Sequence record: LR756511.1
Strand: one strand, 5' to 3'
DNA length: 64,000 bases
The position numbers were made by a program, and so were the translations under genes. Of the stretch, positions 31,753 to 57,133 are shown in pieces (position 1 is the first letter of the stretch; every line of letters begins with the position of its first letter). Under the pieces are notes generated by a model. That model had not been told where the DNA came from and did no database searches. It saw only the letters and a program-made list of their open reading frames with translations.

Positions 31753-31923
31753 TTACAGAAAACTCAAAACTGCCAATAGAAGTGCCCCATAAACCAAAGC
31801 ACTAAGCCCAAGCACACAGCCGAATCCGTCCACCAAATCTCCAAGCCATATTCCCAAGAATAACACTAGAAACATACCTGGAAATAAGAATATAATTCCT
31901 AACGTGCGTAATAACTTACCCAT
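31753..31923 (-). CDS. small two-helix membrane protein (56 aa, not in the ORF track)
   Basis: MGKLLRTLGIIFLFPG...; ATGA overlap with the upstream stop. Confidence 0.5.
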   Translation of the reverse strand: MGKLLRTLGIIFLFPGMFLVLFLGIWLGDLVDGFGCVLGLSALVYGALLLAVLSFL

Positions 31924-32501
31924 CAAGGCTTACCTTTTGCCACTAATGTAAAATTAAACTTATATTTGTTGACTTTGACCATCTTGACTTCATGCTCATT
32001 GACGTTATTCATTATTCCATCTATCTTGTACTCACCAACAGCGCGCTTTAACGTTGGATTAAAGCGATGAATAACCTGTTCGATTAGTTGGTTCATATCT
32101 TCTCGATATAAAGCATTAACAGTCATGCAATAACTAATGTGTATCTTATTATCAAATACGCCTAACCCGTCATTATAAATATTGACAAGCGGTAAATGAA
32201 TTTTATCTTTTACAAAGTCGCTAACCATTGCAATAAGTGAAGTTCGTCGTTCCATTGCGGTATTGGCAAGCTCGTCATTCCCCCAAACTACAGGAACGGT
32301 CCAATCATCTCCTTCCTCATCTATAAGCACCAAGTTGCGGAACTCGTTCATTGTTGCTTCATCGCACTTCTTAATGAATTTGGAATACTTATACTTTTCA
32401 TCCTGTTCATTAGCCAAAGGCAATTCTTCTGGCTTCTTGGCACCCATGCCCAAAAATGCCATCATGCTTCCCAGCACGCTCATAAATGTCCGTCGATTCA
32501 T
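31923..32501 (-). CDS. twin-arginine leader plus compact T4 gp15-like (tail completion) domain
   Basis: MNRRTFM leader after GGAGG; VPVVWG, IHLPLVNI, YCMTVNALYREDMNQLIEQVIHRFNP parallel gp15. Confidence 0.7.
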   Translation of the reverse strand: MNRRTFMSVLGSMMAFLGMGAKKPEELPLANEQDEKYKYSKFIKKCDEATMNEFRNLVLIDEEGDDWTVPVVWGNDELANTAMERRTSLIAMVSDFVKDKIHLPLVNIYNDGLGVFDNKIHISYCMTVNALYREDMNQLIEQVIHRFNPTLKRAVGEYKIDGIMNNVNEHEVKMVKVNKYKFNFTLVAKGKP

Positions 32502-32502
32502 T

Positions 32503-32757
32503 TCAAACCTCCCAAGGGTAATCTTTCCCATAGAAACTATCGAAGTCATCGTCATCGTCACATATATTAAGATAGTCAGCGAAATGCAAACCGTGATTAA
32601 TTCTCGGTTCCCATTCCCTAGCCTTCTTAATACACATCAAATAGAACTTATGCAAATAGGCAGGCCACGATTTATTATCATAGCCCATATGTTTACACCA
32701 TTCGTCAAATATCTCTTTATCCGTCTTGCGTTTCTTCTTCCGTTGGCTCATCTTCAA
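32503..32757 (-). CDS. hypothetical protein
   Basis: ORF in a coupled array. Confidence 0.5.
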   Translation of the reverse strand: MKMSQRKKKRKTDKEIFDEWCKHMGYDNKSWPAYLHKFYLMCIKKAREWEPRINHGLHFADYLNICDDDDDFDSFYGKDYPWEV

Positions 32758-32986
32758 AGTCTTTCTTTATTGATGAAACCTCAAAGTCCATTGCTTCTCT
32801 AACATAGATTTTTTTCCCTCTGTATTCGACCATTGATTCTGCATATATATCCGTGAAGTCCACAAGAGAGGGCGGCTCAGGGAATAATACCACTTCTTGT
32901 AATTCTCCGTCAACCTCAACAGCTATTCCATAGTCGCAGCCAAGCAAAAATTCCTTTACTTCGGGCGTCATAATGAGTCCTTTCAC
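32717..32986 (-). CDS. hypothetical protein
   Basis: ORF in a coupled array. Confidence 0.5.
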   Translation of the reverse strand: MKGLIMTPEVKEFLLGCDYGIAVEVDGELQEVVLFPEPPSLVDFTDIYAESMVEYRGKKIYVREAMDFEVSSIKKDFEDEPTEEETQDG

Positions 32987-33207
32987 TCAGGCGGAACCTC
33001 ATAGGCAATTATTGGCGGGGGCGGCACCCATCCACTTAAATACCAGCCAATAATATTCCCTTCGTCTCCGAAAACAGTAAGGGGAGTGACCAACACTCCC
33101 CTCTTCTGACATTCTTCAACGTTTTCAACTACAACCTTCCAATTCTCTTCCATGTTGAATCTGCCATCAAATCGAAGAGAAATTTTAGGCACAATATCCA
33201 TACGCAT
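32983..33207 (-). CDS. hypothetical protein
   Basis: ORF in a coupled array. Confidence 0.45.
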   Translation of the reverse strand: MRMDIVPKISLRFDGRFNMEENWKVVVENVEECQKRGVLVTPLTVFGDEGNIIGWYLSGWVPPPPIIAYEVPPE

Positions 33208-33208
33208 T

Positions 33209-33586
33209 TTAGTAAAGCTTCAACTCTTTTGTGATCTTATCAATGTGTTCCGCATCATGTGGGCCAATAGCAAGACACGTTTTTGTGGGAACCCCATTAA
33301 ATTCTGTCTTACCACTATCCACAACCATATGAACCGTTAAACCCGCATCCCTGGCACGTTTGTAGACATCTACTAATGCCTCTTCACTGTCAACCTGTAA
33401 TGTGACTTTCGTGAAAGTCCCATGAATCCATTCCCGTTCTTCTGGACTAAGGAAAACAGTCCCATTGAAGAACTTCTGCACACGCTCCGATAGCCACATC
33501 ATCGAAGCATGACTACCCTGTGCTATCTCTTTACCCCTCCGCATCTTCAGGTCACGGCGTATCACTATCACTTGCTTTACGCTCAT
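33209..33586 (-). CDS. pth2: peptidyl-tRNA hydrolase type 2 (PTH2)
   Basis: KQVIVIRRDLKM..GK..AQ.SHA, KVTL, DSGKTEF.G.PT.TCLAIGP. Confidence 0.95.
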   Translation of the reverse strand: MSVKQVIVIRRDLKMRRGKEIAQGSHASMMWLSERVQKFFNGTVFLSPEEREWIHGTFTKVTLQVDSEEALVDVYKRARDAGLTVHMVVDSGKTEFNGVPTKTCLAIGPHDAEHIDKITKELKLY

Positions 33587-33887
33587 ATCTCATATCTGGA
33601 TAATCCAGATAATTTCCTTTCTCTGTCTCGTAAAATTGCCCATCCATTAACTTAATTCTCAAGTCATGGTGGCGAACATCATAGTCTTTATAGATACCTC
33701 GTCCCTTTTCATCAATCTTTACCGTTCCGTCTTCATTTCGCTCATAAATACGGAACACAATCTTCGTTTTGCTACATTCCACGATCTTTTGGCCGAAGCG
33801 ATTAACTCGGCCTGTATCAACGGCAGTATCGGGGTCAGGATAGATCAAAAGACAACCTTCGGTTCCTGCTGCTGGTTCACTTATCAT
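33552..33887 (-). CDS. hypothetical protein
   Basis: coupled ORF. Confidence 0.5.
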   Translation of the reverse strand: MISEPAAGTEGCLLIYPDPDTAVDTGRVNRFGQKIVECSKTKIVFRIYERNEDGTVKIDEKGRGIYKDYDVRHHDLRIKLMDGQFYETEKGNYLDYPDMRYERKASDSDTP

Positions 33888-34188
33888 AAATTCCTAGCAC
33901 CTGTTTAGCTGAATGTAATTGTCGAGCTTCGGTAAGACGCATCTGACACGCTTCACAATCAGGACAAAAGCAAGAGTGAGGACATTTCTTATCAGGCGGG
34001 GGAGCTAGTTTAGCCCATTCTTTCAAGTGATCCAACGTCTGTTCAGGATGCTCGTAAGAATAGCCTTGAAAGCCTTTCTTGCTGTGGTCAACAGGATTGA
34101 TTAAGCAATTATGCAAAAACTTAACAGTGTATTGAGCCTGCCGTAAAGCTGACTCTAACAGCACGACTTTAGCTTCATCGCTTGTCAT
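33877..34188 (-). CDS. hypothetical protein
   Basis: start MTSDEAK with GGAG RBS; the track extension across the tRNA is rejected. Confidence 0.5.
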   Translation of the reverse strand: MTSDEAKVVLLESALRQAQYTVKFLHNCLINPVDHSKKGFQGYSYEHPEQTLDHLKEWAKLAPPPDKKCPHSCFCPDCEACQMRLTEARQLHSAKQVLGIYDK

Positions 34189-34337
34189 TTTTTTGCAATC
34201 TCCACATTCCAATGACTTTTTCCATTCAAGCCGATCCATTTGTCGCTCCATTTCTTCTTCGGTTATTTGACCGTCTGTGCAGAGCGTAACATAATGGTCT
34301 AGAAGATTTCCTTTTGCGTATTCGTATTCTGTTTTAG

Positions 34338-34430
34338 TGGGCCGTGAGGGTTTCGAACCCCCGACTAAGGGATTATGAATCGCGGGTTGATAAACCCGTG
34401 TCCCCTGCTCTACCACTGAGCTAACGGCCC
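34338..34430 (-). tRNA. tRNA-Ile2 (CAU) with a 21-nt insertion in the anticodon loop
   Basis: GGGCCGT/ACGGCCC acceptor, GCTC/GAGC D stem, GGGGA/TCCCT anticodon stem, TTCGAAA T loop; removing 34379..34399 restores the loop CTCATAA. Confidence 0.85.
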
Positions 34431-34447
34431 TGTTCGTACATCTTGAT

Positions 34448-34690
34448 CTAGAGTTGCTTATAGACCCATTCGCCAGCTTTGCCCCAAATTGGACTATCCA
34501 ACTCGTCATTGGATGTGTGCAACTGAGGATAAATACGGCGACAGAGCAGTAGTTGGATTCTCTTCTCAGGGGATATTGGCTCTGTCCACTTCGGAACAGA
34601 TGTTGCTGCCTTTGCCTTCTTGGGAAGAAGGAAAGGAATAACAAGCACTCCAATAATTCTCTTAAGCCAACCGCGTCTTGTAAACATCAT
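34448..34690 (-). CDS. twin-arginine leader micro-protein with a capsid-like RRIYPQL motif
   Basis: TRRGWLK + hydrophobic stretch + AKA; KRIQLLLCRRIYPQL. Confidence 0.55.
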   Translation of the reverse strand: MMFTRRGWLKRIIGVLVIPFLLPKKAKAATSVPKWTEPISPEKRIQLLLCRRIYPQLHTSNDELDSPIWGKAGEWVYKQL

Positions 34691-36112: not shown

Positions 36113-36121
36113 GGCTTCTCC

Positions 36122-38230: not shown

Positions 38231-38452
38231 GTTGTCACTCCGTAGCCGACGTTCTGTTTTATGCTATCATTTCTCTAGTGGCCCCTACCATGCCTTCAAT
38301 CGCGTTGCTCACCCGCTAGGCAAATTTGGGTTAGACGCATTGTGGTTCAAACGATACTCGCTTTCGCTTTCTCTTCCACAAGGAGCAAATGTCCGTCGAA
38401 CTTCCTCACATCCTTAAAGGGTAGTGCGATAGCTCAAGTGACTACATCAACC

Positions 38453-39184
38453 TTAAATGATTAGATTATGCCAGTAAATGATCTTGTTCTGCCCTTCCTC
38501 GATTAAATCCTTACCATCCACCACCGCCAAGACCGCTTCCGTTGATGTCTTCCACTTATTGCGAACATGACCCAGCATAATCATTGCTTTAGCAAGCATT
38601 ATATCCTTAAATGCCTCGTCTATTGCGCCATTGATACTTCCTAGTTTCTTGGCGGTTGCATAACTTTCAAATTGTATCTTAGTGGATTCATACGCCGCGT
38701 CAAGCTGTTGCACATCTAACTCAATCTTGACAACAGGTGCGCCAAGCATTAACAGCACATAATCCTTAGCCTTATCTTTATCAGGAGCCTTAAATTCGAC
38801 TTCCACTTCTGGAATTTCTAATTCTGGTTCGGGCATCATAGTATCGCCCATACAACCATGCTCAAAATCAAAGATCGTAATGGCACCAGACATCGAGCAA
38901 CCAGGACGAACAGGAATTACAACAATATCGTAGTCTTTAAGGTACTCAAGTTTCCGCCATGCGTCTTTCATACGTTCGCAGAACGCTTCGGCCTTATAAG
39001 GCGGAAGTTGTCCTACATCAAGACGGTGGCATAAAAATCCACGCTTCTTGGGGGCAGTATCCACAGCCGCACTTCCAGCATGACCGCCGTAACTCTCTTC
39101 TTGTACAGCTGTAGCTTTACTTACAGCGGTGAGTCCTAAAAAACTGCAAATGCCAGCAATCCATCCTCTACGAGTTTCCATCAT
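38453..39184 (-). CDS. twin-arginine leader + portal(gp20)-like motif + compact neck(gp13)-like domain chimera
   Basis: TRRGWI leader; LDVGQLPPYKAEAFCERMK; KDYVLLMLGAPVVKIELD and DGKDLIEEG. Confidence 0.7.
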   Translation of the reverse strand: MMETRRGWIAGICSFLGLTAVSKATAVQEESYGGHAGSAAVDTAPKKRGFLCHRLDVGQLPPYKAEAFCERMKDAWRKLEYLKDYDIVVIPVRPGCSMSGAITIFDFEHGCMGDTMMPEPELEIPEVEVEFKAPDKDKAKDYVLLMLGAPVVKIELDVQQLDAAYESTKIQFESYATAKKLGSINGAIDEAFKDIMLAKAMIMLGHVRNKWKTSTEAVLAVVDGKDLIEEGQNKIIYWHNLII

Positions 39185-42149: not shown

Positions 42150-43064
42150 TTAAGATAAAAGAGTGTTTCGCAAGCTATTTCTTGCCCACTTTTCCCCTGT
42201 GAGCCTTTCATATGCTTCAACATACTTGTTCCGAGTTTTTTCAATGATATCAGGCGGCAAAGGAGGAGGGGAACTCTCTTTGTCCCAACCGCTATTTTCA
42301 GCCCAATCCCGAATAAACTGCTTGTCAAAAGAAGGAATTGACGCATCCAACTTATAAGCATCTAAAGGCCAAAACCGCGAGCTATCAGGCGTAATAACCT
42401 CATCAATCAAAACAACAGTATTGTTCAAATAAGGCAAAATGCCCCATTCAAACTTAGTATCCGCAATAATAATGCCATTAGCCCAAGCAACCTGAGCCGC
42501 TTCTGTATATAATTCAACACTTAAAGCTTCAATTTCAGCAGCTAATTCAACACCAATTTCTTTTGCCATAACATCAAAGGACACGTTTTCGTCATGTCCC
42601 GTTGCCGCTTTTATGGCTGGTGTAAATATAGGTTTTGGAAATTGTTGATTTTGCCTTAAATTTGGTGGCAAAGGAATACCGCAAACACTACCTGTTTTCT
42701 GATATTCCTTCCACGCGGACCCAGCCAAATAACCTCGCACCACACATTCAAACGGAATCACTTCGGCTCGCTCTACCAACATCGTTCTGCTACGAAACTC
42801 TGGCTCCCTAAAGTCTTCGGGCATCTGATTTAGGTCCGTAGCGATCAAATGATACGGCATTTCCAGCTTTTTTGCCCAAAAACACGAAATTGCCTGAAGG
42901 ATTTTTCCTTTATCTTGAATGGTGTTGGGGAAAACATGATCGAACGCACTAACCCGATCCGTTGTAACAATTATTAACATTGTCTCGCCAAGCTCGTAAA
43001 CATCCCGAACCTTCCCGCGACGACAAACGTAATTATCAACTTTTGTTTCTCGTAAACCTTCCAT
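42150..43064 (-). CDS. purC: phosphoribosylaminoimidazole-succinocarboxamide (SAICAR) synthase
   Basis: GKVRDVY, TDRVSAFD, ECVVRGYLAGSAW, ADTKFEWG, DEVITPDSSRFW, FDKQFIRDW. Confidence 0.97.
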   Translation of the reverse strand: MEGLRETKVDNYVCRRGKVRDVYELGETMLIIVTTDRVSAFDHVFPNTIQDKGKILQAISCFWAKKLEMPYHLIATDLNQMPEDFREPEFRSRTMLVERAEVIPFECVVRGYLAGSAWKEYQKTGSVCGIPLPPNLRQNQQFPKPIFTPAIKAATGHDENVSFDVMAKEIGVELAAEIEALSVELYTEAAQVAWANGIIIADTKFEWGILPYLNNTVVLIDEVITPDSSRFWPLDAYKLDASIPSFDKQFIRDWAENSGWDKESSPPPLPPDIIEKTRNKYVEAYERLTGEKWARNSLRNTLLS

Positions 43065-44480: not shown

Positions 44481-44693
44481 ATGAAATTTAATGAATGGTT
44501 AACACAGAATAATAAAGATTTTGACGAGCTATCGCCTGACATTGGCATGGAAACCATTGAAGATGTTGACTTAATTGAAAGCCAAGTCGAACAATGGATA
44601 ACCAAACTTGTTGGTCTACTTGACAATGCTAGCGAAGAAACTCGCCAAAGACTCGTAGGCAAAATAGTTAGCGAGATTCAGAAGCGGATTTAA
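44481..44693 (+). CDS. putative head-packaged small acidic protein (MKFNEWL N-terminus)
   Basis: TATATA box 5 nt before ATG; CTS-like start. Confidence 0.55.
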   Translation: MKFNEWLTQNNKDFDELSPDIGMETIEDVDLIESQVEQWITKLVGLLDNASEETRQRLVGKIVSEIQKRI

Positions 44694-45105
44694 GCTCGGC
44701 TCTGATCTTCATTAGTATTTTCCCAAGATGATTCTCGCCTTTGCCTTTACAAATTCCCCAAAAGCAATCGCCCCAGGAGTTCGTTTCCTCAATGTATGCA
44801 TCTCCCGTTGCCAAAAGCTTCTCTTTTAACTCTCGGTGTTTGGTAAACTTCTGACGTACTAAGTCTTCCATAACCCCAATTTTGATCTGCTCCCAATCAG
44901 GGCGTAGCGTAACACTCTTGCCAAGCTTCTTCGCATCCCCAGGTTTAGACGATTCCCTAATCCTTCGGCGTTCCGCAGGAACCGTCGTCTTCGCAGCCTG
45001 ATAAGCATGTTCCGTCGAGCTATATTCCAGACCATCGTATTCAACGACCGCTGGATAAAAGTTCGACAAAAACCGATACGTCTTATTGAATCCTAAAATG
45101 TCCAT
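44668..45105 (-). CDS. NADAR (YbiA/DUF1768) family ADP-ribosyl hydrolase
   Basis: FLSNFY, STEHAYQAAK, KFTKH..L..KLLATG, DCFWG, GENHLGKILM. Confidence 0.92.
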   Translation of the reverse strand: MDILGFNKTYRFLSNFYPAVVEYDGLEYSSTEHAYQAAKTTVPAERRRIRESSKPGDAKKLGKSVTLRPDWEQIKIGVMEDLVRQKFTKHRELKEKLLATGDAYIEETNSWGDCFWGICKGKGENHLGKILMKIRAELKSASESR

Positions 45106-45113: not shown

Positions 45114-45401
45114 CTAGTCATCATAATAATCGCGGCTTAGTCGCGCGATTAATTTGTTCTTCTGCTCGGCATCCTTCACCATTTCCGTGAGTTTCTTTCT
45201 CTGCGACTGAATCTTCTCTTCCTTCTCTTTTATCAATTCTTGATAATTAAAGCTATCATAAACCTGACGGAATCCACAAAAAGAAATCAAAAGAAACGCC
45301 ATCGCAACAGCAAAACTATTGCTGTTTGCCATATAAATCCCATAAAATAATGGCACCCACCCCGTAGTAATAAAATACAGGGTGAGAAGAAAGCGTTGCA
45401 T
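45114..45401 (-). CDS. membrane protein with coiled-coil tail
   Basis: two TM segments then heptads. Confidence 0.5.
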   Translation of the reverse strand: MQRFLLTLYFITTGWVPLFYGIYMANSNSFAVAMAFLLISFCGFRQVYDSFNYQELIKEKEEKIQSQRKKLTEMVKDAEQKNKLIARLSRDYYDD

Positions 45402-46174
45402 TATAATGTCAATATCTCACAGCCAGAACCAGTAACCAAAATCGTATGCTCAAATTGAGCCGATAGTTTACCATCCGTAGTTCTTACTGTCCATTGATCG
45501 TTCTCGTCTACCAATACATCCGCCCCGCCCAAACAAATCATAGGTTCAATAGTGAACGTCATTCCAGCAAACATTCGAACGCCATCTGTCTTCTGAGCTA
45601 CGTGACAAATCTGCGGCGGTTCATGAAATTCAATACCAACGCCATGCCCACAGAACTGCTCCACCACCGTACAGCCCTGTAGTATAGCATACGAGTAGAT
45701 ACTATGTCCAATTTCCCCCGTTAAAGCTCCAGGCTTAACTTGCTTTATGCCTAAGTCTAAACACTTCTTTGTAACTTCTAGAAGATGCTCTGCATCTTTT
45801 GAAATTTGCCCAACAGGAAACGTGGAAGCAGTATCCCCATAATACCCGTCGAGAATCGTCGTCACATCTATTCCTACGATGTCGCCTTCTTTTAATTCAG
45901 TGTCATCGGGAATACCGTGGCAGACTACCTCGTTGAGAGAGATGCAACTGCTTTTTGGATATGGTGGCTGTTTTGGACACGCTCCTTTATAGCCTAATGT
46001 TGCGGCGTGCGCACCATGATCCCGAATGAAGTCAGCCATCAATTTATCAAGTTCCGATGTTTTCTTCCCTGGCACCACATACGGTTCGATAAATTTCAAA
46101 GTTGCAGCAGCGAGTTTGCAACTCTTACGGATGCCTTCAATTTGTCGATTACTTTTTATAAGGATATGCTTCAT
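45401..46174 (-). CDS. map: methionine aminopeptidase type I
   Basis: SLNEVVCHGIP, DVTT..DGYYGDT, FCGHGVG..FHE.P, EPM, SAQFEHT. Confidence 0.97.
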   Translation of the reverse strand: MKHILIKSNRQIEGIRKSCKLAAATLKFIEPYVVPGKKTSELDKLMADFIRDHGAHAATLGYKGACPKQPPYPKSSCISLNEVVCHGIPDDTELKEGDIVGIDVTTILDGYYGDTASTFPVGQISKDAEHLLEVTKKCLDLGIKQVKPGALTGEIGHSIYSYAILQGCTVVEQFCGHGVGIEFHEPPQICHVAQKTDGVRMFAGMTFTIEPMICLGGADVLVDENDQWTVRTTDGKLSAQFEHTILVTGSGCEILTL

Positions 46175-46290
46175 TGTGGCTATTCTGCCGTGAAGCCAGA
46201 AATTTCGCAATGGATTTTTGTCGTGAAATTTCCATTTGCAAAACAATTTCGTCCGATTACTATATATCGTGAAAGGAGGCATTCGACCAT

Positions 46291-46764: not shown

Positions 46765-47066
46765 GCTATGCAGACAAAAAATTCAAATTTGTAGATAATC
46801 ATAAATACAAATTTAAAGTTGGTGACAGATTACGATTAATCCAAGACTATCAAGTTGGTTTGGACGTGACGCCAATTGGATCGGCTGGAATTGTTACAGC
46901 TTTCCACGAATGGGAACTAAATCTGAACGACTTCAAAGAAATGCTACTGGCCGAAATTGGTGAGGAAGGCATCAAAGACGCTTTAGCCACATTCAAGGCA
47001 AAGCGTGAAGAACGGTTTGCGGCGGGTGATAAACGAACTCTTTATGATGTGCTAAAGAGCGTCTAG
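46761..47066 (+). CDS. hypothetical protein
   Basis: coupled ORF, KFKVGDRLR SH3-like start. Confidence 0.5.
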   Translation: MSYADKKFKFVDNHKYKFKVGDRLRLIQDYQVGLDVTPIGSAGIVTAFHEWELNLNDFKEMLLAEIGEEGIKDALATFKAKREERFAAGDKRTLYDVLKSV

Positions 47067-47128
47067 AGGGAGTCGAACCCTCGTCATCAGATTGGAAATC
47101 TGAGGTAATGCCGTTATACGATAGACGC
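47058..47128 (-). tRNA. tRNA-Gly (UCC)
   Basis: GCGTCTA/TAGACGC, TCAGA-TTTCCAA-TCTGA, GAGGG-TTCGACT-CCCTC. Confidence 0.92.
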
Positions 47129-47137
47129 TACGAAATC

Positions 47138-47482
47138 TCAAAAATACTGATCGTTGTCGTATGATGCAACCTTCTCACGTACGGTTCTTTTCTTGCCATT
47201 GCAATCGCTTGGAATGGCCATCTTGCCGCCCGTAAGACGGAGATAGAAGTCGGCGGCTTCTTCGGGTGTTTCGAAGTATTCCACCAATTCCTCTTCATCT
47301 ATAATGGTCTTCTTCTCTCGATCCGTGAGAGTAAGAAAGTCAACCGTCTCGCTAGAATAGATGTAATCTACACAGTAGAATCCATCACTTGCATAGCATG
47401 ACAGGTCGCCACCCATGCCAATCTGCTGACGCTCACTCAGAAGTGTGATTATAGCGGAGCGAAGGGTTTCGGTCGGAGACAT
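47138..47482 (-). CDS. hypothetical protein
   Basis: AAGGAG RBS, 114 aa. Confidence 0.55.
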   Translation of the reverse strand: MSPTETLRSAIITLLSERQQIGMGGDLSCYASDGFYCVDYIYSSETVDFLTLTDREKKTIIDEEELVEYFETPEEAADFYLRLTGGKMAIPSDCNGKKRTVREKVASYDNDQYF

Positions 47483-47521
47483 CTTTGGCTCTCCTTAGCA
47501 GGTGAGGGACGGGACGAACAG

Positions 47522-47592
47522 AGCCGCCACCGAGAATCGAACTTGGGTCTGTACTTTACCAAAGTACCGTTCTACCATTGAACTATGGCGGC
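47522..47592 (-). tRNA. tRNA-Thr (GGU)
   Basis: GCCGCCA/TGGCGGC, GTACT-TTGGTAA-AGTAC. Confidence 0.93.
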
Positions 47593-47740
47593 TTTCACGT
47601 ATCTATTCCCTTAGATACTAAAATTTTTATCCTGTGTAAAGGTCAGTTGTTTTGTTTTCCTCGCAGTCGGTCCCAAATAATTAAAAGCAGGGCCATTCCA
47701 AAGATTCCGTAAACAATAAATCCACCACCAGTCATTTCAG

Positions 47741-47811
47741 AGCCTCCACCAAGAATCGAACTTGAGTCTACACATTACGAGTGTGTCGTCCTACCACTGA
47801 ACGATAGAGGC
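47741..47811 (-). tRNA. tRNA-Thr (CGU)
   Basis: GCCTCTA/TGGAGGC, ACACA-CTCGTAA-TGTGT. Confidence 0.93.
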
Positions 47812-48285
47812 TTACAAATCCTTCCTCATCTCGATTGAATGTCTTTTATACGAGCATTTTTCGTAAAAATTCACATTTTCTTCGCTGCAATTCAAAATAA
47901 TTTTATAACAGTTTTGAGCCTTGGCTTCGATTTCCAAGAACGTCATCAACTTCTTGCCAATGCCATTTCCCTGATAATCCTTGTGTACGGCAACATCTTC
48001 TACATGCATAACGGTGGCGCCGTTGTGCAAGAATTTCTTCTCAATAAAATACGATGCTGTGCCAACAATAAAATTGTCGGCAACGCACACAATCGTCTCA
48101 ATGTTGTTTCGCAGTCGATCTCGCATGATCTCGCCAAACTGCCGTTGGCTTAGTGAGACAGGGGATAATGCTGCGATGGTTTCAACAAATCCTTCGTTGA
48201 AATCAGACGCCAAGAGATGTCTAATTTCCAGACTGGCAAGCGACTTTAACGGCTTTTTTGGGAAAAGCCAGCAGAGTATACCCAT
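47812..48285 (-). CDS. GNAT acetyltransferase, glucosamine-6-phosphate N-acetyltransferase (GNA1)-like
   Basis: EKKFLH....HVEDVAVH..YQGNGIGKKL, CYKIILNCSE.NV.FYEKC. Confidence 0.85.
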   Translation of the reverse strand: MGILCWLFPKKPLKSLASLEIRHLLASDFNEGFVETIAALSPVSLSQRQFGEIMRDRLRNNIETIVCVADNFIVGTASYFIEKKFLHNGATVMHVEDVAVHKDYQGNGIGKKLMTFLEIEAKAQNCYKIILNCSEENVNFYEKCSYKRHSIEMRKDL

Positions 48286-48289
48286 ATCT

Positions 48290-48317
48290 ACCTTACTACA
48301 ACCTCAGCCGTTGTCAA
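48290..48317 (-). promoter_or_regulatory. phage early-type promoter TTGACA-N12-GTAG-TAAGGT
   Basis: copy of the recurrent motif, 4 nt from the GNAT ATG (likely leaderless). Confidence 0.6.
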
Positions 48318-48343
48318 ATGTTTGCACAATTTTTATGAAAAAT

Positions 48344-48700
48344 TTACAGTAGTAGCTGTGGGTAAATCCTGTTGATCTTAGGAATAGTAATCTTGTCAAA
48401 TACTGGTGGCGGTAGCTTCCTTCGACGCTCAAGTTCAGCCTCTAGAAGCGGTTGCAGCCTATTGTAAAGGTCATATAGCTGTTCACTTGAAAAACTAAAA
48501 AAGTCTTCTGATGTGACCCTTAGATAATGATGGGCGTCCTGTAGCCAAATCACTTTTTCAGTTTGCTTGAACCTTACGACCTTCCAAGGGATATGCCCCT
48601 CTTCATTATGATCCTCTAGGACTATTTCATTATCGGGGATATGCTCTTGCATACCCCAACCCTGCATAAATCCGTGAATCGTATGCCATTCGTATTGCAT
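48344..48700 (-). CDS. hypothetical protein
   Basis: start trimmed to lie downstream of tRNA-Thr(UGU). Confidence 0.5.
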   Translation of the reverse strand: MQYEWHTIHGFMQGWGMQEHIPDNEIVLEDHNEEGHIPWKVVRFKQTEKVIWLQDAHHYLRVTSEDFFSFSSEQLYDLYNRLQPLLEAELERRRKLPPPVFDKITIPKINRIYPQLLL

Positions 48701-48720
48701 TTTATTGAATTTTGAGAAAG

Positions 48721-48802
48721 AGCCGCAGGAGGGAATCGAACCCACAATGTCTTTCGACGCAGGTTTACAAAACCTGTCCCTTACCATTCGGGGCACTGCG
48801 GC
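48721..48802 (-). tRNA. tRNA-Thr (UGU) with a long (class II-like) variable arm
   Basis: GCCGCAG/CTGCGGC, CAGGT-TTTGTAA-ACCTG, variable region CGTC-GAAA-GACATT, GTGGG-TTCGATT-CCCTC. Confidence 0.85.
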
Positions 48803-49180: not shown

Positions 49181-49385
49181 ACATCTTCTCGTAATACGCT
49201 TCCTGCGATATCTCTTCCACTATGTCAACATGGGGAAGAGACACATCAAGCAAATCACCATCTTCTACGGCATGGCGCAGCACATTGATTTTGAGTATCT
49301 TAATCGGCGTTTTGTAGTAGACATCATACTCGCAACCTTTGTGCGGTGCCACCCGTAGATACCAATATTGCATTAAACCGTCCAC
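49173..49385 (-). CDS. hypothetical protein
   Basis: coupled ORF. Confidence 0.45.
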   Translation of the reverse strand: MDGLMQYWYLRVAPHKGCEYDVYYKTPIKILKINVLRHAVEDGDLLDVSLPHVDIVEEISQEAYYEKMYD

Positions 49386-49792
49386 CTTTCGTAGCGAAGG
49401 ATTTTAATTGGCTCGCCAGTCTGACCAGCCAAAGCCTTAATCAAGTCGCCAATCGTGCGAGAAGAATCACGCACCCATTCCTGTTCCTCAAGTGGCCCAG
49501 GCAATCCAGCTACTAACTGAAAGGATATTTCCTTACACAATGCCTGAAAGCCTTCCGTCTTTGCAACAAAGTCTGTGCCGCAACCCACTTCAAACATCAC
49601 TCCAATGCGACCTGAATGCACATGAGCGTAAATGTATTTAAAGTTAACGTCCTTATCAGGCGGAACCCAACTACTCTTAATAAAGGTTTCCGCCGCCTCT
49701 ACATTGTCATCATATGCAGCCAATGCGCTCTTAATCAAACTCACAGGAGCATTAGTCCTGCTTCTTAACTCCTTAACCTTATTCATATCCAT
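49373..49792 (-). CDS. tsf: minimal translation elongation factor Ts
   Basis: VKELRSRT.A.....K.AL, YAHVHSGRIGV..EV.C.TDFVAKTE.F, LEEQ.WVRD...TIGDL....GEPIKILRYER. Confidence 0.85.
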   Translation of the reverse strand: MDMNKVKELRSRTNAPVSLIKSALAAYDDNVEAAETFIKSSWVPPDKDVNFKYIYAHVHSGRIGVMFEVGCGTDFVAKTEGFQALCKEISFQLVAGLPGPLEEQEWVRDSSRTIGDLIKALAGQTGEPIKILRYERWTV

Positions 49793-52139: not shown

Positions 52140-52472
52140 TCATTCTACCCAATAAGCACGAATGAAACCAATGACTTCTGGTGAACCTGATTTATGCACG
52201 TAGAAACCCCAAAAGGAAAAAGAATACCTTGCCTTGAAAGTATATTTTTCTTCTGGTTTCAATTCGACTACGAAGACAGTGCTTTCACCGTATCCATTAT
52301 TATATATCGCCCGTACTCTTACGGGAAAATCGTTCGTATTTTTGATGGTGCCGTCACCCCCATCCAGGCCACGGGCAGCAAAAGTGACACCAGCCGCTTC
52401 ACCTTCATAATTCCTTGGTCCATTGCAGCCAACAAGCAACACAAGAATCAATAATAGCTTTTTCATTCGCAA
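52140..52472 (-). CDS. putative lipoprotein
   Basis: MKKLLLILVLLVGC lipobox-like leader. Confidence 0.6.
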   Translation of the reverse strand: MRMKKLLLILVLLVGCNGPRNYEGEAAGVTFAARGLDGGDGTIKNTNDFPVRVRAIYNNGYGESTVFVVELKPEEKYTFKARYSFSFWGFYVHKSGSPEVIGFIRAYWVE

Positions 52473-53776: not shown

Positions 53777-53887
53777 CTTTCACCTCATACGCAGGCATAT
53801 AAAATATTCCGCAATCTGGACAGTAATAGGTTACAGGATTAGTGTCGCCATAATAATATCCATTCGGATGCGTGCATTGTTCATTAT

Positions 53888-54313: not shown

Positions 54314-54518
54314 ACTTTTTCCATTTCGTGTTAGGTGTTACCATACCCCAATAACGACCTTCTATCAATCTCGCGTTTCCCGTATGGTCACTAACTTCTT
54401 TGACTTCATATTGAAGAACTTCGCCCCAAACAAGAAAGAATTCACCCGTATCCGTGGTTGAAACGCGAGCTTGTTTCTCTTCGACATTGCACAAATAAGC
54501 CCGTTCGAAATCATTCAA
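54300..54518 (-). CDS. hypothetical protein
   Basis: coupled ORF. Confidence 0.45.
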   Translation of the reverse strand: MNDFERAYLCNVEEKQARVSTTDTGEFFLVWGEVLQYEVKEVSDHTGNARLIEGRYWGMVTPNTKWKKYVSS

Positions 54519-54993
54519 TTCCCTCTTCTATCAGGTCTTCGCGTAATCCCGTTAATACTTCACCAAGCCAATTCGTGCCCTTCCAGTTATTTCGATCCTC
54601 GATCCCTGGCTCACCTTCACGCATTCCAATGCCCCAAATGCAATCATAAGGACTTGCTTCAACCAGCGTTCTTCCTTTGGTTGCCAGCAACTTTTCTAAT
54701 AGATCAGAATTTTGCGTGAACTTAGCATAATTGCCTTCATAGACAACCTCTCTGGCAATTGCATTCCAGCGGTCAGCGTTAAAGCCTTTGACCTGTCGGC
54801 CTAGCTTCTTTTGGTCCCTTGGATGCTCAGCCGCCATGATTTGAGCCAGCGTGTCTTCGTCGCCAAACAGTTTGGCTTTGCTTGCCATCATATACTGTTC
54901 AGCACAGTTATACTTGATTCCATCGACTTCAAACTCAGATTCCTCCCATTGAGACAGGAACCCATGCCAGAAGAACAAAAATTGTTCACTCAT
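54511..54993 (-). CDS. NADAR (YbiA/DUF1768) family ADP-ribosyl hydrolase
   Basis: LSQW..S.F, CAEQYMMASKA.LFGD, KKLGRQV..F, KFTQN..L...LLAT, EASPYDCIWGIG, GTNWLGEVL. Confidence 0.95.
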   Translation of the reverse strand: MSEQFLFFWHGFLSQWEESEFEVDGIKYNCAEQYMMASKAKLFGDEDTLAQIMAAEHPRDQKKLGRQVKGFNADRWNAIAREVVYEGNYAKFTQNSDLLEKLLATKGRTLVEASPYDCIWGIGMREGEPGIEDRNNWKGTNWLGEVLTGLREDLIEEGIE

Positions 54994-55174
54994 CTTGTGT
55001 CCTCAAGAATTCCCTTGCTGCTTCCAAAGCCGCTTCATTATGAGCTTTACAGATAGCTCTGTTCTTTTCGTTTTGTTCCTTGTCGTTTGTCACATAGAAA
55101 TACATTAACTCAACGGGACACGTTTGCACCTTAACATTCCCTACAAATATCTCTCGTAAAGTTCCTTCTTCCAT
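54986..55174 (-). CDS. hypothetical protein
   Basis: coupled ORF. Confidence 0.45.
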   Translation of the reverse strand: MEEGTLREIFVGNVKVQTCPVELMYFYVTNDKEQNEKNRAICKAHNEAALEAAREFLRTQDE

Positions 55175-55599
55175 TGCTGATAGACTTCCTTAACCTTTGG
55201 ATTACCGAGAACCTTTGTGCCAATTTCGACAACTAAAGGATTTGGCTGATGCCAAGACATATCAAGCATCTTAATCGCTTTTTCTGGCCCTACTTTGCTA
55301 GCCGCGATTAAATACGCCATTGCGGAGCTTCGGGATATTCCCGCTCGACACGCAACAATAAGCTCGTCCTTATCCTTAGCCCATTCAATAACTTGTTTGA
55401 TTTGATCTTCAGTTGCAATTTCATAGCCAGGACGTGCCATCTCAACATCGTCAAACTTAACGCAAATACAATCCTTTGCGATAGAGGTTATAAGATGTTC
55501 TACTTCGTGTCCAAAAGTCTCACCGATTGCAACTATTGGAATATTTGGATTGTAGATAAGCGTCGAATGTGCTTCTCTACGGGACATAATTCTAATCAT
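55141..55599 (-). CDS. protein-tyrosine phosphatase-like (CX5R) protein
   Basis: VACRAGISRSSA, F.D, PNPLVV. Confidence 0.85.
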   Translation of the reverse strand: MIRIMSRREAHSTLIYNPNIPIVAIGETFGHEVEHLITSIAKDCICVKFDDVEMARPGYEIATEDQIKQVIEWAKDKDELIVACRAGISRSSAMAYLIAASKVGPEKAIKMLDMSWHQPNPLVVEIGTKVLGNPKVKEVYQQWKKELYERYL

Positions 55600-55600
55600 A

Positions 55601-55804
55601 CTACCTTCTATAATAATCTATAACATAATCAGCCATATCATCGACTGACAACAAGCAATCTTCGATATCTTCGCCTAAGCGATACAAATATTCGTCTATT
55701 ACTAAACGTTCCTTTTCCTTCTCCGTGAAAAAGGCGATCACATCAGCGTCATAACCAATATAGGTTAAAGCTCGATCTATTTTAGATAACCAAAAATTCC
55801 TCAT
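55601..55804 (-). CDS. hypothetical protein
   Basis: start MRNFW just downstream of tRNA-Ile(UAU). Confidence 0.45.
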   Translation of the reverse strand: MRNFWLSKIDRALTYIGYDADVIAFFTEKEKERLVIDEYLYRLGEDIEDCLLSVDDMADYVIDYYRR

Positions 55805-55807
55805 TAA

Positions 55808-55880
55808 TAGGCGGTTAGGGAATCGAACCCCATTATTGCTGGCATATAAGACCAGTCCCGCGCCATGCGAGTCACCGCCC
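55808..55880 (-). tRNA. tRNA-Ile (UAU)
   Basis: GGGCGGT/ACCGCCT, CTCG/CGGG D stem, CTGGT-CTTATAT-GCCAG, TGGGG-TTCGATT-CCCTA. Confidence 0.8.
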
Positions 55881-56078
55881 AACTAACTGCTTACACCTTT
55901 CACACAATTCCATCTCTTTCCAACGCACATCGACTGCTCTACCATATTTAGCAGCTTCATTTACGAAATCACATGCCCGTTTCTTGGCTTCCTCTTCCGT
56001 CAAATTCTCGTCAGCCATCTTCCAAGAATTATCAACGCTGAAGCAGACGCTATATTCCCAATACCATTTCATCTTCAA
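55872..56078 (-). CDS. hypothetical protein
   Basis: 68 aa ORF. Confidence 0.45.
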   Translation of the reverse strand: MKMKWYWEYSVCFSVDNSWKMADENLTEEEAKKRACDFVNEAAKYGRAVDVRWKEMELCERCKQLVGR

Positions 56079-56081
56079 CCC

Positions 56082-56243
56082 TTAATTTAATTGCACGGAA
56101 TTATAACCACATCTCTTGCATGGCTCTCCAGTCGCGGTCGTCCTATTATTCCACTGATGACCTAGCCACTGACACAAGAGCTTGTGTTTTAGCCACTGAA
56201 ACCAAGTTGGACGTGGCTCATAGAATTCTTGCCATCCATTCAT
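56082..56243 (-). CDS. small Cys/His protein (53 aa, DUF1660-like; not in the ORF track)
   Basis: KLLCQWLGHQW...CKRCG; ATGA overlap with the upstream stop. Confidence 0.5.
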   Translation of the reverse strand: MNGWQEFYEPRPTWFQWLKHKLLCQWLGHQWNNRTTATGEPCKRCGYNSVQLN

Positions 56244-57133
56244 TTCTCGCTCCAACACTTTGCTAATTTATAACCGCGTGTGGAAGCATTTTCTTTGAAT
56301 GCCTTATCAAATGCTTCTTTGTATTCCTGCGACGATCCAAAACAAGGCCAAGACCAGCTTTTGCCGTGAATCTCATCTTTTACCTTGCAAGGAACGTACT
56401 TCATTACATCTTCTACAATACAATCTGCAAGAACGTCCCGACCGCATGTGTCTAGGCCACCATAAACTAATTCGCCAGCAAGCCTTTTGTTGTCCTGAAT
56501 TAAATTCCTTGCCTTTTCATCGTCAACAATTACACCAAAGTAGTCACTGGCAATTCTTTTGACTTCCTTGATGTCTTTTAATTCAACTTCCAGTTTCATA
56601 GCTTTGCAGCCCCCCTCTGGTGGAACAGCATCAATAGCAACCAATTTGTAAGTATCTTTGTCTACAACGAAAACACCATCTTCTCGGACTCTACCTTGGC
56701 CTAATCCACGCGATCTAAAAACCACTTCATTTTTGTCTAATAGAAACTGGAGGATTTTACCTTTTGGCGTATCTAATACTTCAATTTCAGCCTTTAAATA
56801 ATCATTTTCAATCTTAAGGTCTTTGACGACATGACTTACAGAATCAAAATGAATCAATAATTCCTTGGGCATTCCCAACTCGCCCATCATGGTTCTACTC
56901 TGCACAAGTTCCCTATGATCTTGAACAATCTTCTCTAATACGTCTCTAGTATAGATTCTGTTATTGCCGTTGGGAACATCAGCGCGTAATATGTCGAATG
57001 TAAGGTCTTTTCTTTCTGCCGCCGCGTTAGAAGCGGTAATAGAACCTTGGCCAACCTCCCATTCTGATTGTCCAGCGACAAGTGCTGTTAGGCCATAGGC
57101 GCACTCAGCAATAAAACAACGCCGATTAATCAT
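56240..57133 (-). CDS. twin-arginine leader + inactive T4 gp21-like prohead protease + C-terminal extension
   Basis: NRRCFI leader; N.N.RIY, GELGMP, VSH, LDTPKG, FRSRGLG, AIDAV. Confidence 0.75.
   Translation of the reverse strand: MINRRCFIAECAYGLTALVAGQSEWEVGQGSITASNAAAERKDLTFDILRADVPNGNNRIYTRDVLEKIVQDHRELVQSRTMMGELGMPKELLIHFDSVSHVVKDLKIENDYLKAEIEVLDTPKGKILQFLLDKNEVVFRSRGLGQGRVREDGVFVVDKDTYKLVAIDAVPPEGGCKAMKLEVELKDIKEVKRIASDYFGVIVDDEKARNLIQDNKRLAGELVYGGLDTCGRDVLADCIVEDVMKYVPCKVKDEIHGKSWSWPCFGSSQEYKEAFDKAFKENASTRGYKLAKCWSEK

What the first reader, a model, noticed from the sequence alone, without database searches (positions are those of the whole stretch)
31923..57133. Dispersed family of twin-arginine-leader mini-paralogs of T4-type virion morphogenesis proteins
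Seen: four minus-strand ORFs begin with an RR-x-(F/W)-hydrophobic leader. They are 32501 MNRRTFM, 34690 MMFTRRGWLK..AKA, 39184 MMETRRGWI..ATA and 57133 MINRRCFI. No other ORF I read in the window starts this way. Recognised from T4 protein knowledge: each continues into a shortened or inactivated piece of a head/neck protein (gp15; a gp23-type RRIYPQL motif; a gp20 motif plus gp13; gp21 with both catalytic residues lost). All four sit among early/accessory genes, not in a structural operon. Inference: a repeated design that routes assembly-protein mimics to the membrane or periplasm through Tat. Possible roles are superinfection exclusion, dominant-negative poisoning of competing T4-like phages, or decoys for host sensors that detect portal/capsid proteins. 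I know of no described system like this.
Basis: partly seen in the sequence, partly recalled or inferred. Interest (0 to 1): 0.9.

Follow-up and report, generated by a model that had tools for sequence, protein, structure and literature searches.

The report
Export-tagged copies of phage connector proteins
A huge phage, probably of Planctomycetes, and its relatives carry extra cut-down or inactivated copies of their head-to-tail connector and capsid-protease proteins, each fused to a secretion (twin-arginine type) leader. This points to an undescribed class of phage proteins that work at or beyond the cell membrane; their function is still unknown.

Summary
The window is part of LR756511.1, an unannotated 595-kb uncultured phage. 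All four minus-strand ORFs start as described.

- **A** has a T4 gp15 tail-terminator fold.
- **B** carries the major-capsid motif RRIYPQL plus a gp13 motif.
- **C** is a portal clip domain fused to the gp13 four-helix bundle.
- **D** is a gp21-type protease domain that has lost its catalytic His and Ser.

Full-length gp13, gp15, gp20, gp21 and gp23 genes sit 220-310 kb away in the structural module.

Across the genome about 7 of 915 crude ORF calls have such leaders, and 5 of the 7 are head or neck paralogs. None of 14 Sec/lipoprotein-type leader proteins is (p=0.001). The leaders are conserved in divergent relatives of A, C and D, where the RR pair is invariant, but not in the closest relative of B. 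A related phage also has a leader fused to a portal crown fragment.

The leaders show the classical Tat hallmarks, yet only one ortholog passes the curated Tat HMM cut-offs.

Export is well supported but inferred. The biological role is open: exclusion of other phages, dominant-negative or decoy action, or assembly control. I found nothing like this in the literature searched.

The parts
31923..32501 (-). ORF A (192 aa): an RR leader followed by a tail-terminator (T4 gp15-like) core
   Evidence: BLASTP to the phage's own 350-aa gp15 E 5e-20; family profile to T4 gp15 4HUH/3J2M E 2.4e-9; AF2 plus Foldseek to 4huh_E E 5e-9, TM 0.59; about 10 leader-bearing homologs
32439..32501 (-). Leader of A, MNRRTFMSVLGSMMAFLGMGA
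   Evidence: R3 and R4 are invariant among 9 divergent family members, where only 16 columns are invariant. GGGAGG lies 7 nt (6-nt spacer) upstream of the ATG.
31753..31926 (-). 57-aa ORF with two predicted membrane helices, whose start overlaps the stop of A
   Evidence: A positional counterpart exists in the syntenic contig L018 but not in L020 or L021.
34448..34690 (-). ORF B (80 aa). RR leader at 34607-34690; capsid N-arm motif CRRIYPQL at 34520-34543; gp13 swing-domain motif PIWGKAGEWVYKQ at 34454-34492
   Evidence: The ortholog in L018 is 48 aa; it keeps CRRIYPQ but has no RR leader. tRNA-Pro follows at 34337-34430.
38453..39184 (-). ORF C (243 aa). RR leader at 39107-39184; portal clip-like domain at about 38855-39052; gp13 domain-I four-helix bundle at about 38456-38788
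   Evidence: portal mapped onto T4 gp20; family profile to T4 gp13 residues 9-52 and 241-297; AF2 model; domain limits from PMC4493910 and PMC12929587
56240..57133 (-). ORF D (297 aa). RR leader at 57071-57133; catalytically dead gp21/S77 domain at 56615-56992; Cys-rich C-terminal extension of unknown fold at 56243-56614
   Evidence: Pfam PF03420 33.8 bits and phrog_207 6e-27; catalytic His to Met and Ser to Arg; leader-bearing dead homologs P0077, P0078 and L187

Best explanation
These are accessory genes, not the genes that build the virion. Each encodes an N-terminal twin-arginine-type signal peptide: an [N/D/S/T]-R-R-x-F-[M/L] n-region, a weakly hydrophobic Gly/Ala-rich h-region, and a c-region that usually ends in an AxA-like site with a Lys upstream. 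Behind the leader sits the conserved core of one protein of the portal-to-tail connector or prohead core:
- the portal clip plus the gp13 four-helix bundle (C);
- the gp15 tail-terminator core (A);
- a gp21 protease fold without its catalytic His and Ser (D);
- short capsid N-arm and gp13 motifs (B).

**Shown:** the domain make-up, the paralogy to full-length genes elsewhere in the genome, the loss of catalytic residues, the conservation of the leader over long divergence, and the non-structural gene context.

**Inferred:** the proteins fold in the cytoplasm, are taken by the host Tat pathway to or across the cytoplasmic membrane, and are mostly cut by signal peptidase. This would yield soluble extracytoplasmic proteins that act by binding rather than by catalysis or by being built into particles.

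**Purpose, a weaker inference:** most likely conflict with other phages at the envelope, that is superinfection exclusion or competition. The confidence figure refers to the 'exported, non-virion, binding-only paralogs' core. I put the exclusion role alone at about 0.25-0.3.
For: **Leader features.** All 23 of 23 selected RR-bearing leaders from the window, the genome and homologs carry RR. F follows at +2 in 17 of 23, and M or L follows that. The best 10-residue hydropathy window averages 2.11, against 2.97 for the same genome's 14 Sec/lipoprotein leaders (p=1.8e-6; same-genome subset p=0.0025). The c-regions read LAKA, LVQA, TLEA, AVEA, AKA and ATA.

**Curated Tat models.** The leader of P0077, a D-type ortholog, passes both TIGR01409 (19.7, cut-off 16.7) and PF10518 (22.9, cut-off 22.7).

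**Conservation.**
- The RR pair is invariant in the A family. Ten of the 11 leader-bearing members in the tree (one short sequence left out) form one supported clade, with branch lengths of about 1 substitution per site.
- C orthologs keep RR in 4 of the 7 full-length orthologs with an intact N-terminus, and KR or RK in 2 more.
- All four D-type members keep both RR and the His-to-Met change.

**Specific association.** 5 of 7 Tat-type leader proteins are head or neck paralogs, against 0 of 14 Sec-type (p=0.001). A related 590-kb phage adds a leader fused to a portal crown fragment (E 7e-23).

**Canonical genes are present elsewhere.** Gp23 2.5e-86, Portal_T4 2.6e-73, S77 2.5e-27, gp15 1.2e-18.

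**Non-structural context.** The D-type gene lies between RNR and CTP synthase in two other contigs.
Against: - The curated Tat HMMs report none of the four window leaders, and most homolog leaders are sub-threshold or unreported.
- No dedicated predictor (SignalP or TatP) was available.
- D's h-region contains a Glu, and A lacks a clean AxA site.
- B's leader is absent from its closest ortholog.
- Leaderless forms exist: an inactive gp21 (L180) and small gp13/gp15 proteins in other phages. Leaderless capsid and portal fragments also occur in this genome. So export is not a general requirement for such fragments.
- Neck, portal and protease parts of an incoming virion do not normally enter the periplasm, so a direct exclusion mechanism is hard to picture.
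- The host is unknown. One gene, PurC, points to Planctomycetota.
Confidence: 0.5

Rival explanations
1. Capture at the membrane, or capture-and-export. The mimics bind their targets in the cytoplasm. The targets could be subunits of a competing phage, the phage's own late proteins made too early, or host immune sensors that recognise conserved portal, capsid or protease features. The Tat leader then docks the complex at TatBC, or tows it out by the known 'hitchhiker' route. The net effect is a dominant-negative or decoy action.
For: - The retained pieces are the most conserved, interface-forming segments of each protein (60-66% identity to generic gp13 and portal motifs).
- The D protein is catalytically dead but keeps the family's substrate-side motifs.
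- Tat rather than Sec is used specifically for this class, although the genome uses Sec leaders freely.
- Host sensing of prohead protease activity by CBASS has been reported (bioRxiv 10.64898/2026.03.04.709575). Sensing of portals by Avs proteins is established knowledge.
- Leaderless fragments could act in the same way without export.
Against: - No target has been identified.
- The conserved AxA-like cleavage sites suggest ordinary full translocation and release.
- Co-export of a 60-100 kDa partner or of rings is near or beyond the known limits of Tat.
- The mimics would also bind the phage's own proteins.
Confidence: 0.22
2. Membrane-nucleated assembly factors for the phage's own head. T4 starts portal assembly on the inner membrane with gp40 and YidC. 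By analogy, leader-bearing portal, protease and capsid-motif paralogs would tether or time the initiation complex at the membrane.
For: - T4 portal assembly is membrane-associated although gp20 has no membrane segment (PMC4493910).
- The portal clip, the portal crown, the gp21 fold and the capsid N-arm motif all belong to the initiation vertex.
Against: - A positive-inside N-terminal leader puts the passenger outside the cytoplasm, not on its inner face.
- gp13 and gp15 act after DNA packaging, away from the membrane.
- The genes lie among metabolic and translation genes, not in the structural module.
Confidence: 0.1
3. The leader is a prohead-targeting propeptide, like the T4 capsid-targeting sequence, which the prohead protease removes. 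The proteins would then be internal head components.
For: - T4 internal proteins use N-terminal targeting peptides (established knowledge).
- Inactive protease paralogs occur in giant phages, for example SPN3US gp117 (PMC5694885).
- A-x-E strings often follow the leaders.
Against: - The leaders are hydrophobic signal-peptide-like sequences, unlike the amphipathic T4 targeting peptides.
- This phage's capsid propeptide carries T4-type L-x-E sites, which the leaders lack.
- One leader passes the curated Tat models.
Confidence: 0.07
4. The ORFs are decaying partial duplicates, or chance ORFs, with no function.
For: - Many partial copies of structural genes are scattered in this genome.
- B is short, and its leader is not conserved.
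Against: - A, C and D have full-length orthologs at 31-46% identity in several other huge-phage contigs, with conserved leaders and conserved motifs.
- The N-terminal enrichment is 8 observed against fewer than 1 expected.
Confidence: 0.03

Closest known systems
Bacterial twin-arginine (Tat) signal peptides, including 'hitchhiker' export of folded complexes
   Same: The [S/T/N]-R-R-x-F-[L/M] motif, an h-region less hydrophobic than Sec leaders, a basic residue in the c-region, and an AxA-like cleavage site. One ortholog passes TIGR01409 and PF10518.
   Different: The passengers are fragments of phage virion proteins rather than cofactor enzymes. Most of the leaders fall below the curated HMM cut-offs. 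Tat dependence is untested.
T4 superinfection-exclusion proteins Imm and Sp (own knowledge)
   Same: Phage-encoded, non-structural proteins that act at the inner membrane or in the periplasm, encoded outside the structural modules.
   Different: Imm and Sp are not homologs of virion proteins and do not use Tat leaders. No exclusion activity has been shown here.
Inactive prohead-protease paralogs of giant phages, for example SPN3US gp117 (PMC5694885)
   Same: A second, diverged copy of the gp21-type protease fold that lacks the catalytic His, alongside the active enzyme.
   Different: gp117 has no reported export leader. D-type proteins carry an RR leader and lie among nucleotide-metabolism or accessory genes.
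Structural-protein mimics of phage satellites: SaPI Ccm/CpmB, P4 Sid, PLE TcaP (own knowledge)
   Same: Homologs or mimics of capsid-assembly proteins used to interfere with another element's assembly.
   Different: Those act in the cytoplasm, are encoded by satellites, and redirect capsid size. Here the phage itself encodes export-tagged pieces of connector proteins.
T4 gp40/YidC membrane-associated portal initiation (PMC4493910)
   Same: It links portal-vertex proteins to the inner membrane.
   Different: gp40 is not a portal paralog. The expected topology of an RR leader places the passenger on the far side of the membrane.

Membership tests
Tat (twin-arginine) signal peptide | Twin-arginine consensus S/T-R-R-x-F-L-K near the N-terminus | tested here: met
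   A NRRTFM, B TRRGWL, C TRRGWI, D NRRCFI. Across 23 family leaders RR is found in 23 of 23, F at +2 in 17 of 23, and M/L/F next in 20 of 23.
Tat (twin-arginine) signal peptide | Score above the curated cut-off of TIGR01409 / PF10518 | tested here: not met
   No hit was reported for the four window leaders. Among relatives only P0077 passes (19.7 against 16.7; 22.9 against 22.7). P0078 scores 20.1, rec410484 18.1 (PF10518) and 15.5 (TIGR01409), P0174 15.3 and P0171 13.5, all sub-threshold.
Tat (twin-arginine) signal peptide | h-region less hydrophobic than Sec leaders; c-region with a basic residue and an AxA site | tested here: met
   Best 10-residue hydropathy window 2.11 against 2.97 for the genome's own Sec/lipoprotein leaders (p=1.8e-6). 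c-regions ...SKATA...KKAKA...DKLAKA...SKLVQA. A and D are less clean.
Tat (twin-arginine) signal peptide | Export depends on TatABC and on the RR pair; the host has a Tat system | not testable with these tools
   The host is unknown; PurC points to Planctomycetota. No TatA-like ORF was found in the phage by a motif scan.
Peptidase S77 (T4 gp21 prohead protease) | Pfam PF03420 above its gathering score | tested here: met
   D scores 33.8 bits against a cut-off of 27, and phrog_207 gives 6e-27.
Peptidase S77 (T4 gp21 prohead protease) | Catalytic His and Ser (triad H-S-D, PMC5694885) | tested here: not met
   LDHP becomes LGMP and SSRG becomes RSRG in D. The same His-to-Met change is present in P0077, P0078 and L187. 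The phage's own gp21 and nine canonical homologs keep both residues. D is a homolog but not an enzyme.
T4 gp15 tail terminator | Sequence and fold of the terminator core | tested here: met
   Pfam on A alone is sub-threshold (16.6 against 25). The A-family profile hits T4 gp15 with E 2.4e-9. The AF2 model hits 4huh_E with E 5e-9 and TM 0.59, followed by terminators of T5, lambda, Mu and pyocin R2.
T4 gp15 tail terminator | C-terminal region that binds gp14 (T4 residues 203-245, PMC12929587); position in the tail/neck gene module | tested here: inconclusive
   The profile alignment covers only gp15 residues 6-147. A is about 165 aa after the leader, against 272-350 aa for canonical forms. The gene is not in the structural module.
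T4 gp13 neck adaptor | Domain I four-helix bundle | tested here: met
   The C-family profile aligns to T4 gp13 residues 9-52 and 241-297 (E 2.8e-6). The AF2 model has four helices. C is 62.5% identical to the phage's own gp13 over 40 aa.
T4 gp13 neck adaptor | Swing domain, fibritin-binding domain and portal-binding C-terminal arm | tested here: not met
   The stretch corresponding to T4 residues 52-239 is missing, and C ends just after the last helix. Domain limits are from PMC12929587.
T4 gp20 portal | Complete wing-stem-clip-crown architecture | tested here: not met
   Only a clip-like segment is present. C residues 48-82 match portal 505-536, which aligns with the start of the T4 clip (residues 279-358) (PMC4493910). 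The full portal (Portal_T4 2.6e-73) is elsewhere in the genome.
Superinfection-exclusion proteins | Blocks entry or development of a second phage | not testable with these tools
Only the location signal and the gene context are compatible with this role.

The most novel reading that the evidence does not exclude
A clade of huge phages runs a 'capture-and-export' system. Interface mimics of the portal clip or crown, the gp13 adaptor, the gp15 terminator, the gp21 protease and the capsid N-arm would bind their targets in the cytoplasm. The targets would be subunits of rival T4-like phages, or host immune sensors tuned to these conserved features. The Tat pathway can carry folded complexes, and it would be used to pull the targets to or through the membrane.
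Probability: 0.12. Interest if true: 0.95.

Novelty: categorically new. Interest (0 to 1): 0.8.

Why it matters
If these proteins are really exported, a lineage of huge phages sends copies of its own internal assembly parts to a compartment where virions are never built. No current model of phage biology predicts that. It would point either to a new form of phage-phage or phage-host conflict that uses structural mimicry, or to an unknown envelope step in the life cycle of huge phages, possibly of Planctomycetes, whose phage biology is almost unexplored.

The families are compact and conserved, with clear mutational controls: RR to KK, and the already dead protease. The question can therefore be tested directly in laboratory strains.

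Tried and rejected
- **GenBank phages.** tblastn of A, B and C against 50,697 GenBank phage records found only LR756511.1 itself, so no cultured relative is available.
- **Homolog search for A.** The word-indexed search found nothing. The exhaustive HMMER search was needed.
- **Curated Tat HMMs.** On the leaders these were mostly negative or sub-threshold.
- **Foldseek of the C model.** It gave only weak E-values, although T4 neck chains ranked high by probability. I relied on sequence profiles instead.
- **Phage-encoded TatA.** A motif scan found none.
- **T4 late promoter TATAAATA.** The motif is rare in this genome (40 copies on both strands) and lies within 100 nt upstream of only 6 ORF calls, so expression timing could not be read from promoters.
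- **Shared leader cassette.** There is no DNA-level similarity among the leader regions, so this idea was rejected.
- **Conserved membrane partner.** The 2-TM ORF after A is conserved only in the closest relative. No conserved neighbours were found for C or D.
- **PHROG scans of rec129141 and rec157861, the two RR-leader proteins without structural paralogy.** These gave nothing.
- **Prohead-targeting propeptide.** Considered and judged unlikely; see the rival explanations.
- **Silent-cassette (gene-conversion) idea.** Rejected, because the copies are too diverged (30-60% amino-acid identity) and are conserved ORFs with leaders.
- **Literature searches.** None of the top-ranked huge- or jumbo-phage papers mentions twin-arginine, and the twin-arginine searches turned up no structural paralogs.

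Full report
**Source and observation.**

The window is bases 186001-250000 of LR756511.1, an unannotated 595,163-bp 'uncultured phage' record. It contains no N. No paper in the searchable library mentions the accession.

- A, 31923-32501: MNRRTFM...
- B, 34448-34690: MMFTRRGWLK...AKA
- C, 38453-39184: MMETRRGWI...ATA
- D, 56240-57133: MINRRCFI...

Each ATG is preceded by a Shine-Dalgarno-like purine run. For A, orthologs that start at MNRR confirm the start site. A relaxed six-frame scan of the window finds no other credible ORF of this type. The only other real signal peptide in the window is a lipoprotein, MKKLLLILVLLVGC, at 52140-52472.

**What the passengers are.**

- *D* passes the Pfam Peptidase_S77 gathering score (33.8 bits) and matches PHROG 207 at 6e-27. 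It is 38% identical to a canonical 222-aa gp21 encoded at record position 525953-526621. In an alignment with that gene and with canonical homologs, D reads LGMP where the family has LDHP, and RSRG where it has SSRG. These are the positions that read differently from the family consensus in the crystallised T4 gp21 chain 5JBL, where I take them to be engineered. PMC5694885 describes the triad as H-S-D. D is therefore a dead protease fold, followed by a 124-residue Cys-rich extension with no detectable relatives.
- *A* is 29% identical to the phage's own 350-aa gp15 (E 5e-20), which itself scores Pfam T4-gp15_tss at 1.2e-18. A profile of the A family hits T4 gp15 in the PDB at 2.4e-9. An AlphaFold model (pLDDT 72.6) superposes on 4HUH with E 5e-9 and TM 0.59. 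Tail terminators of T5, lambda, Mu and R-pyocin follow in the list.
- *C* is a chimera. Residues 48-82 are 60% identical to residues 505-536 of the phage's 857-aa portal. That portal stretch aligns with T4 gp20 at [20 protein letters not shown], the start of the clip domain (T4 residues 279-358; PMC4493910). The clip is the part of the portal exposed outside the capsid, where terminase and later gp13 attach. The C-terminal half of C aligns to T4 gp13 residues 9-52 and 241-297. That is exactly gp13 domain I, the four-helix bundle. [quoted passage not shown] The AlphaFold model shows an alpha/beta unit followed by four helices.
- *B* is an 80-aa ORF. After its leader come CRRIYPQL and PIWGKAGEWVYKQ. 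The first is the motif at the start of the Gp23 domain of the capsid protein (PLIRRIYPQL). The second matches residues 165-180 of the phage's own gp13.

Full-length Gp23, Portal_T4 (with an intein-like insert), S77, gp15 and gp13-like genes all lie at record positions 466-534 kb. The window copies are therefore extras.

**Is the leader a real, specific feature?**

I made crude ORF calls for the whole genome (915 ORFs). Only eight have RR-x-[FWLIMV]-hydrophobic within the first 12 residues followed by an uncharged hydrophobic stretch. The rate of the same pattern at internal positions predicts 0.2-0.9. One of the eight (MRRVFVALLLVLA...) looks like a Sec leader. Of the other seven, five carry pieces of head or neck proteins: A to D, plus an 80-aa ORF at record 410484-410726 that is leader plus portal clip (phrog_213).

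The same genome has at least 14 ordinary Sec or lipoprotein leaders of the MKK..., Leu-rich type. None of those proteins has any paralog in the genome. The contrast of 5 of 7 against 0 of 14 gives Fisher p=0.001.

I compared 23 RR-bearing leaders from this genome and from homologs:
- The consensus is [N/D/S/T]-R-R-x-F-[M/L].
- The h-region is clearly less hydrophobic than in the genome's Sec leaders (2.11 against 2.97; p=1.8e-6).
- The h-region is richer in Gly, Ala, Ser and Thr.
- The c-region usually ends in an AxA-like site with a Lys a few residues upstream.

These are the textbook discriminators of Tat leaders from Sec leaders (own knowledge).

Against this, the curated models are mostly silent. 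Only the leader of P0077 passes TIGR01409 and PF10518. A few others are sub-threshold, and the four window leaders are not reported at all. I therefore treat 'Tat-type' as well supported by its features but not established.

**Conservation elsewhere.**

- *C family.* C has nine full-length orthologs at 31-45% identity on other large contigs of up to 590 kb. Two have truncated N-termini. Of the other seven, four keep RR, two have KR or RK, and one has no leader. All keep the clip-like and gp13-like blocks.
- *D family.* D has three relatives with the same design: P0077, P0078 and a high-GC contig, L187. All three have RR leaders (MISRRNVLKG..., MNRREFLME...) and the same His-to-Met loss. In two of these contigs the gene sits between the small subunit of ribonucleotide reductase and CTP synthase.
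- *A family.* The word-indexed search found nothing for A. The exhaustive search found 76 cluster representatives: 12 leader-bearing forms, about 37 small leaderless forms and about 25 long canonical gp15s. In a maximum-likelihood tree, ten of the 11 leader-bearing proteins included fall in one supported clade (96/84). That clade has long internal divergence and lies next to the canonical long gp15 clade. In an alignment of nine members with 40% mean identity, the two arginines are among only 16 invariant columns.
- *Co-occurrence.* Two IMG/VR contigs from the sample that yielded the 590-kb JGI contig (3300036766), which I take to be pieces of it, carry an A-type and a C-type gene. That phage also has a further 111-aa ORF, MDRRTWFASLFGGVAAILGYKTAQ, followed by a portal crown fragment. 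The fragment is 53% identical to this phage's portal residues 678-749 (E 7e-23).
- *Control.* About 1 Mb of ordinary T4-like phage sequence around gp13, gp15 and gp21 genes contains no credible RR-leader gene.

**Limits of the pattern.**

- B's closest ortholog lies in a contig syntenic with window 31.7-36.5 kb. It is only 48 aa, keeps CRRIYPQ, and has no RR leader. B is the weakest of the four.
- A leaderless dead gp21 (L180) exists. Leaderless small gp13 and gp15 proteins occur together on a 176-kb contig, where they may be that phage's ordinary neck proteins.
- This genome also has at least six leaderless ORFs built from pieces of the capsid protein or portal, some of them fused to Cys-rich modules. 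One lies in the window at 9953-10459(+). The C-terminus of ORF 48344-48796 repeats the motif as INRIYPQLLL.

The RR-leader proteins are therefore a distinct, conserved subset within a broader tendency of this lineage to duplicate parts of its structural genes.

**Context and host.**

The neighbouring genes are PTH2, a sugar-nucleotidyl transferase, SAICAR synthetase, two NADAR genes, methionine aminopeptidase, a GNAT, an EF-Ts-like gene, a phosphatase-like gene and ten tRNAs. None is structural.

Whether these are early genes cannot be decided. The T4 late-promoter motif is rare in this genome and sits upstream of only six ORF calls.

The phage's SAICAR synthetase is closest (50-58% identity) to genes of Planctomycetota in almost all of the best 80 genome hits. 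This is a single-gene hint that the host is a planctomycete.

**Mechanism.**

*Shown:* the proteins keep the conserved cores of connector and prohead proteins. They lack the catalytic residues (D), or the domains that fix the canonical proteins into the virion (the C-family profile aligns only to gp13 domain I; A lacks about 100 residues of gp15). They carry conserved leaders, and they are encoded away from the structural module.

*Inferred:*
- Tat-type targeting.
- Cleavage at the AxA-like site.
- A soluble extracytoplasmic location.
- Action by binding.

The specific use of a Tat-type leader for this class, in a genome that uses Sec leaders for other proteins, suggests that folding or complex formation in the cytoplasm before transport matters.

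*The purpose is open.* I rank the roles in this order:
1. An envelope-level role in conflict with other phages. The difficulty is that neck and portal parts of an incoming virion do not enter the periplasm.
2. Capture at the membrane, or capture-and-export, of cytoplasmic targets. These could be rival phage subunits, or host sensors of portal, capsid or protease. CBASS sensing of prohead protease activity was recently reported (bioRxiv 10.64898/2026.03.04.709575).
3. A gp40-like role in membrane-associated head initiation (PMC4493910).
4. A prohead-targeting propeptide.

Non-functional remnants are excluded for A, C and D by their conservation.

**Comparison with the known, and verdict.**

The individual parts are familiar. 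Tat leaders, T4-type folds and inactive protease paralogs in giant phages (SPN3US gp117, PMC5694885) are all described. Imm and Sp are envelope exclusion proteins, and satellites encode assembly mimics.

I found no description of export-tagged paralogs of portal, adaptor, terminator and protease proteins in any phage. Its functional proposals remain untested hypotheses.

Noticed in passing
L011:31014-33587 (record 531014-533587, outside the window): The 857-aa portal gene carries an intein-like insert (CVAGDTL...VMHNC). Pfam Intein_splicing scores 33.8 bits, just below its cut-off of 35.8.
   Followed up: partly
window 9953-10459 (+) and window 48347-48376 (-): Leaderless pieces of the major capsid protein occur as separate ORFs. 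A 168-aa ORF is 30% identical to MCP residues 317-442. The C-terminus of ORF 48344-48796 repeats the N-arm motif as INRIYPQLLL. Five more such fragments of MCP or portal lie elsewhere in the genome, some fused to Cys-rich modules.
   Followed up: partly
L013:16460-16795 (590-kb JGI contig Ga0373622_0000005): A related huge phage has a 111-aa ORF with an RR leader (MDRRTWFASLFGGVAAILGYKTAQ) fused to a portal crown fragment. The fragment is 53% identical to this phage's portal residues 678-749, E 7e-23.
   Followed up: yes
window 31753-31926 (-): A 57-aa ORF with two predicted membrane helices starts on the stop codon of ORF A. A counterpart exists in the closest syntenic contig (L018) but not in more distant A-type loci.
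   Followed up: partly
window 42150-43064 (-): The phage SAICAR synthetase (PurC) has its best genome matches almost exclusively in Planctomycetota (Pirellulales, Bremerella, Brocadiia and others; 50-58% identity). This suggests a planctomycete host.
   Followed up: partly
window 34337-34430, 47057-48802, 55807-63742: There are ten tRNA genes on the minus strand. They include a 94-nt tRNA-Pro(cgg) directly after ORF B and a tRNA-Thr that overlaps the annotated start of ORF 48344-48796, so that ORF's true start must be further downstream.
   Followed up: no
window 33877-34653 (-): This mechanical 258-aa ORF overlaps B but is mostly not a gene. Only its C-terminal 100 or so residues have an ortholog (L018 4594-4899), and its middle is the reading of the tRNA-Pro region.
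   Followed up: yes
window 33209-33586, 45401-46177, 49373-49792, 44668-45105, 54511-54993: A cluster of translation-related and ADP-ribose-related accessory genes: PTH2 peptidyl-tRNA hydrolase, methionine aminopeptidase, a truncated EF-Ts-like protein, one Pfam-confirmed NADAR-domain protein (44668-45105) and a second NADAR-like ORF (54511-54993) judged by eye only.
   Followed up: no
window 38231-38452: A 222-nt stretch downstream of ORF C has no ORF in any minus-strand frame. It was not examined for an RNA or a terminator.
   Followed up: no
record 129141-129599 and 157861-158208 (outside the window): Two further RR-leader ORFs (MERRGFMF..., 152 aa; MDRRSFLG..., 115 aa, Cys-rich) have no detectable similarity to structural proteins or to any PHROG family.
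   Followed up: partly
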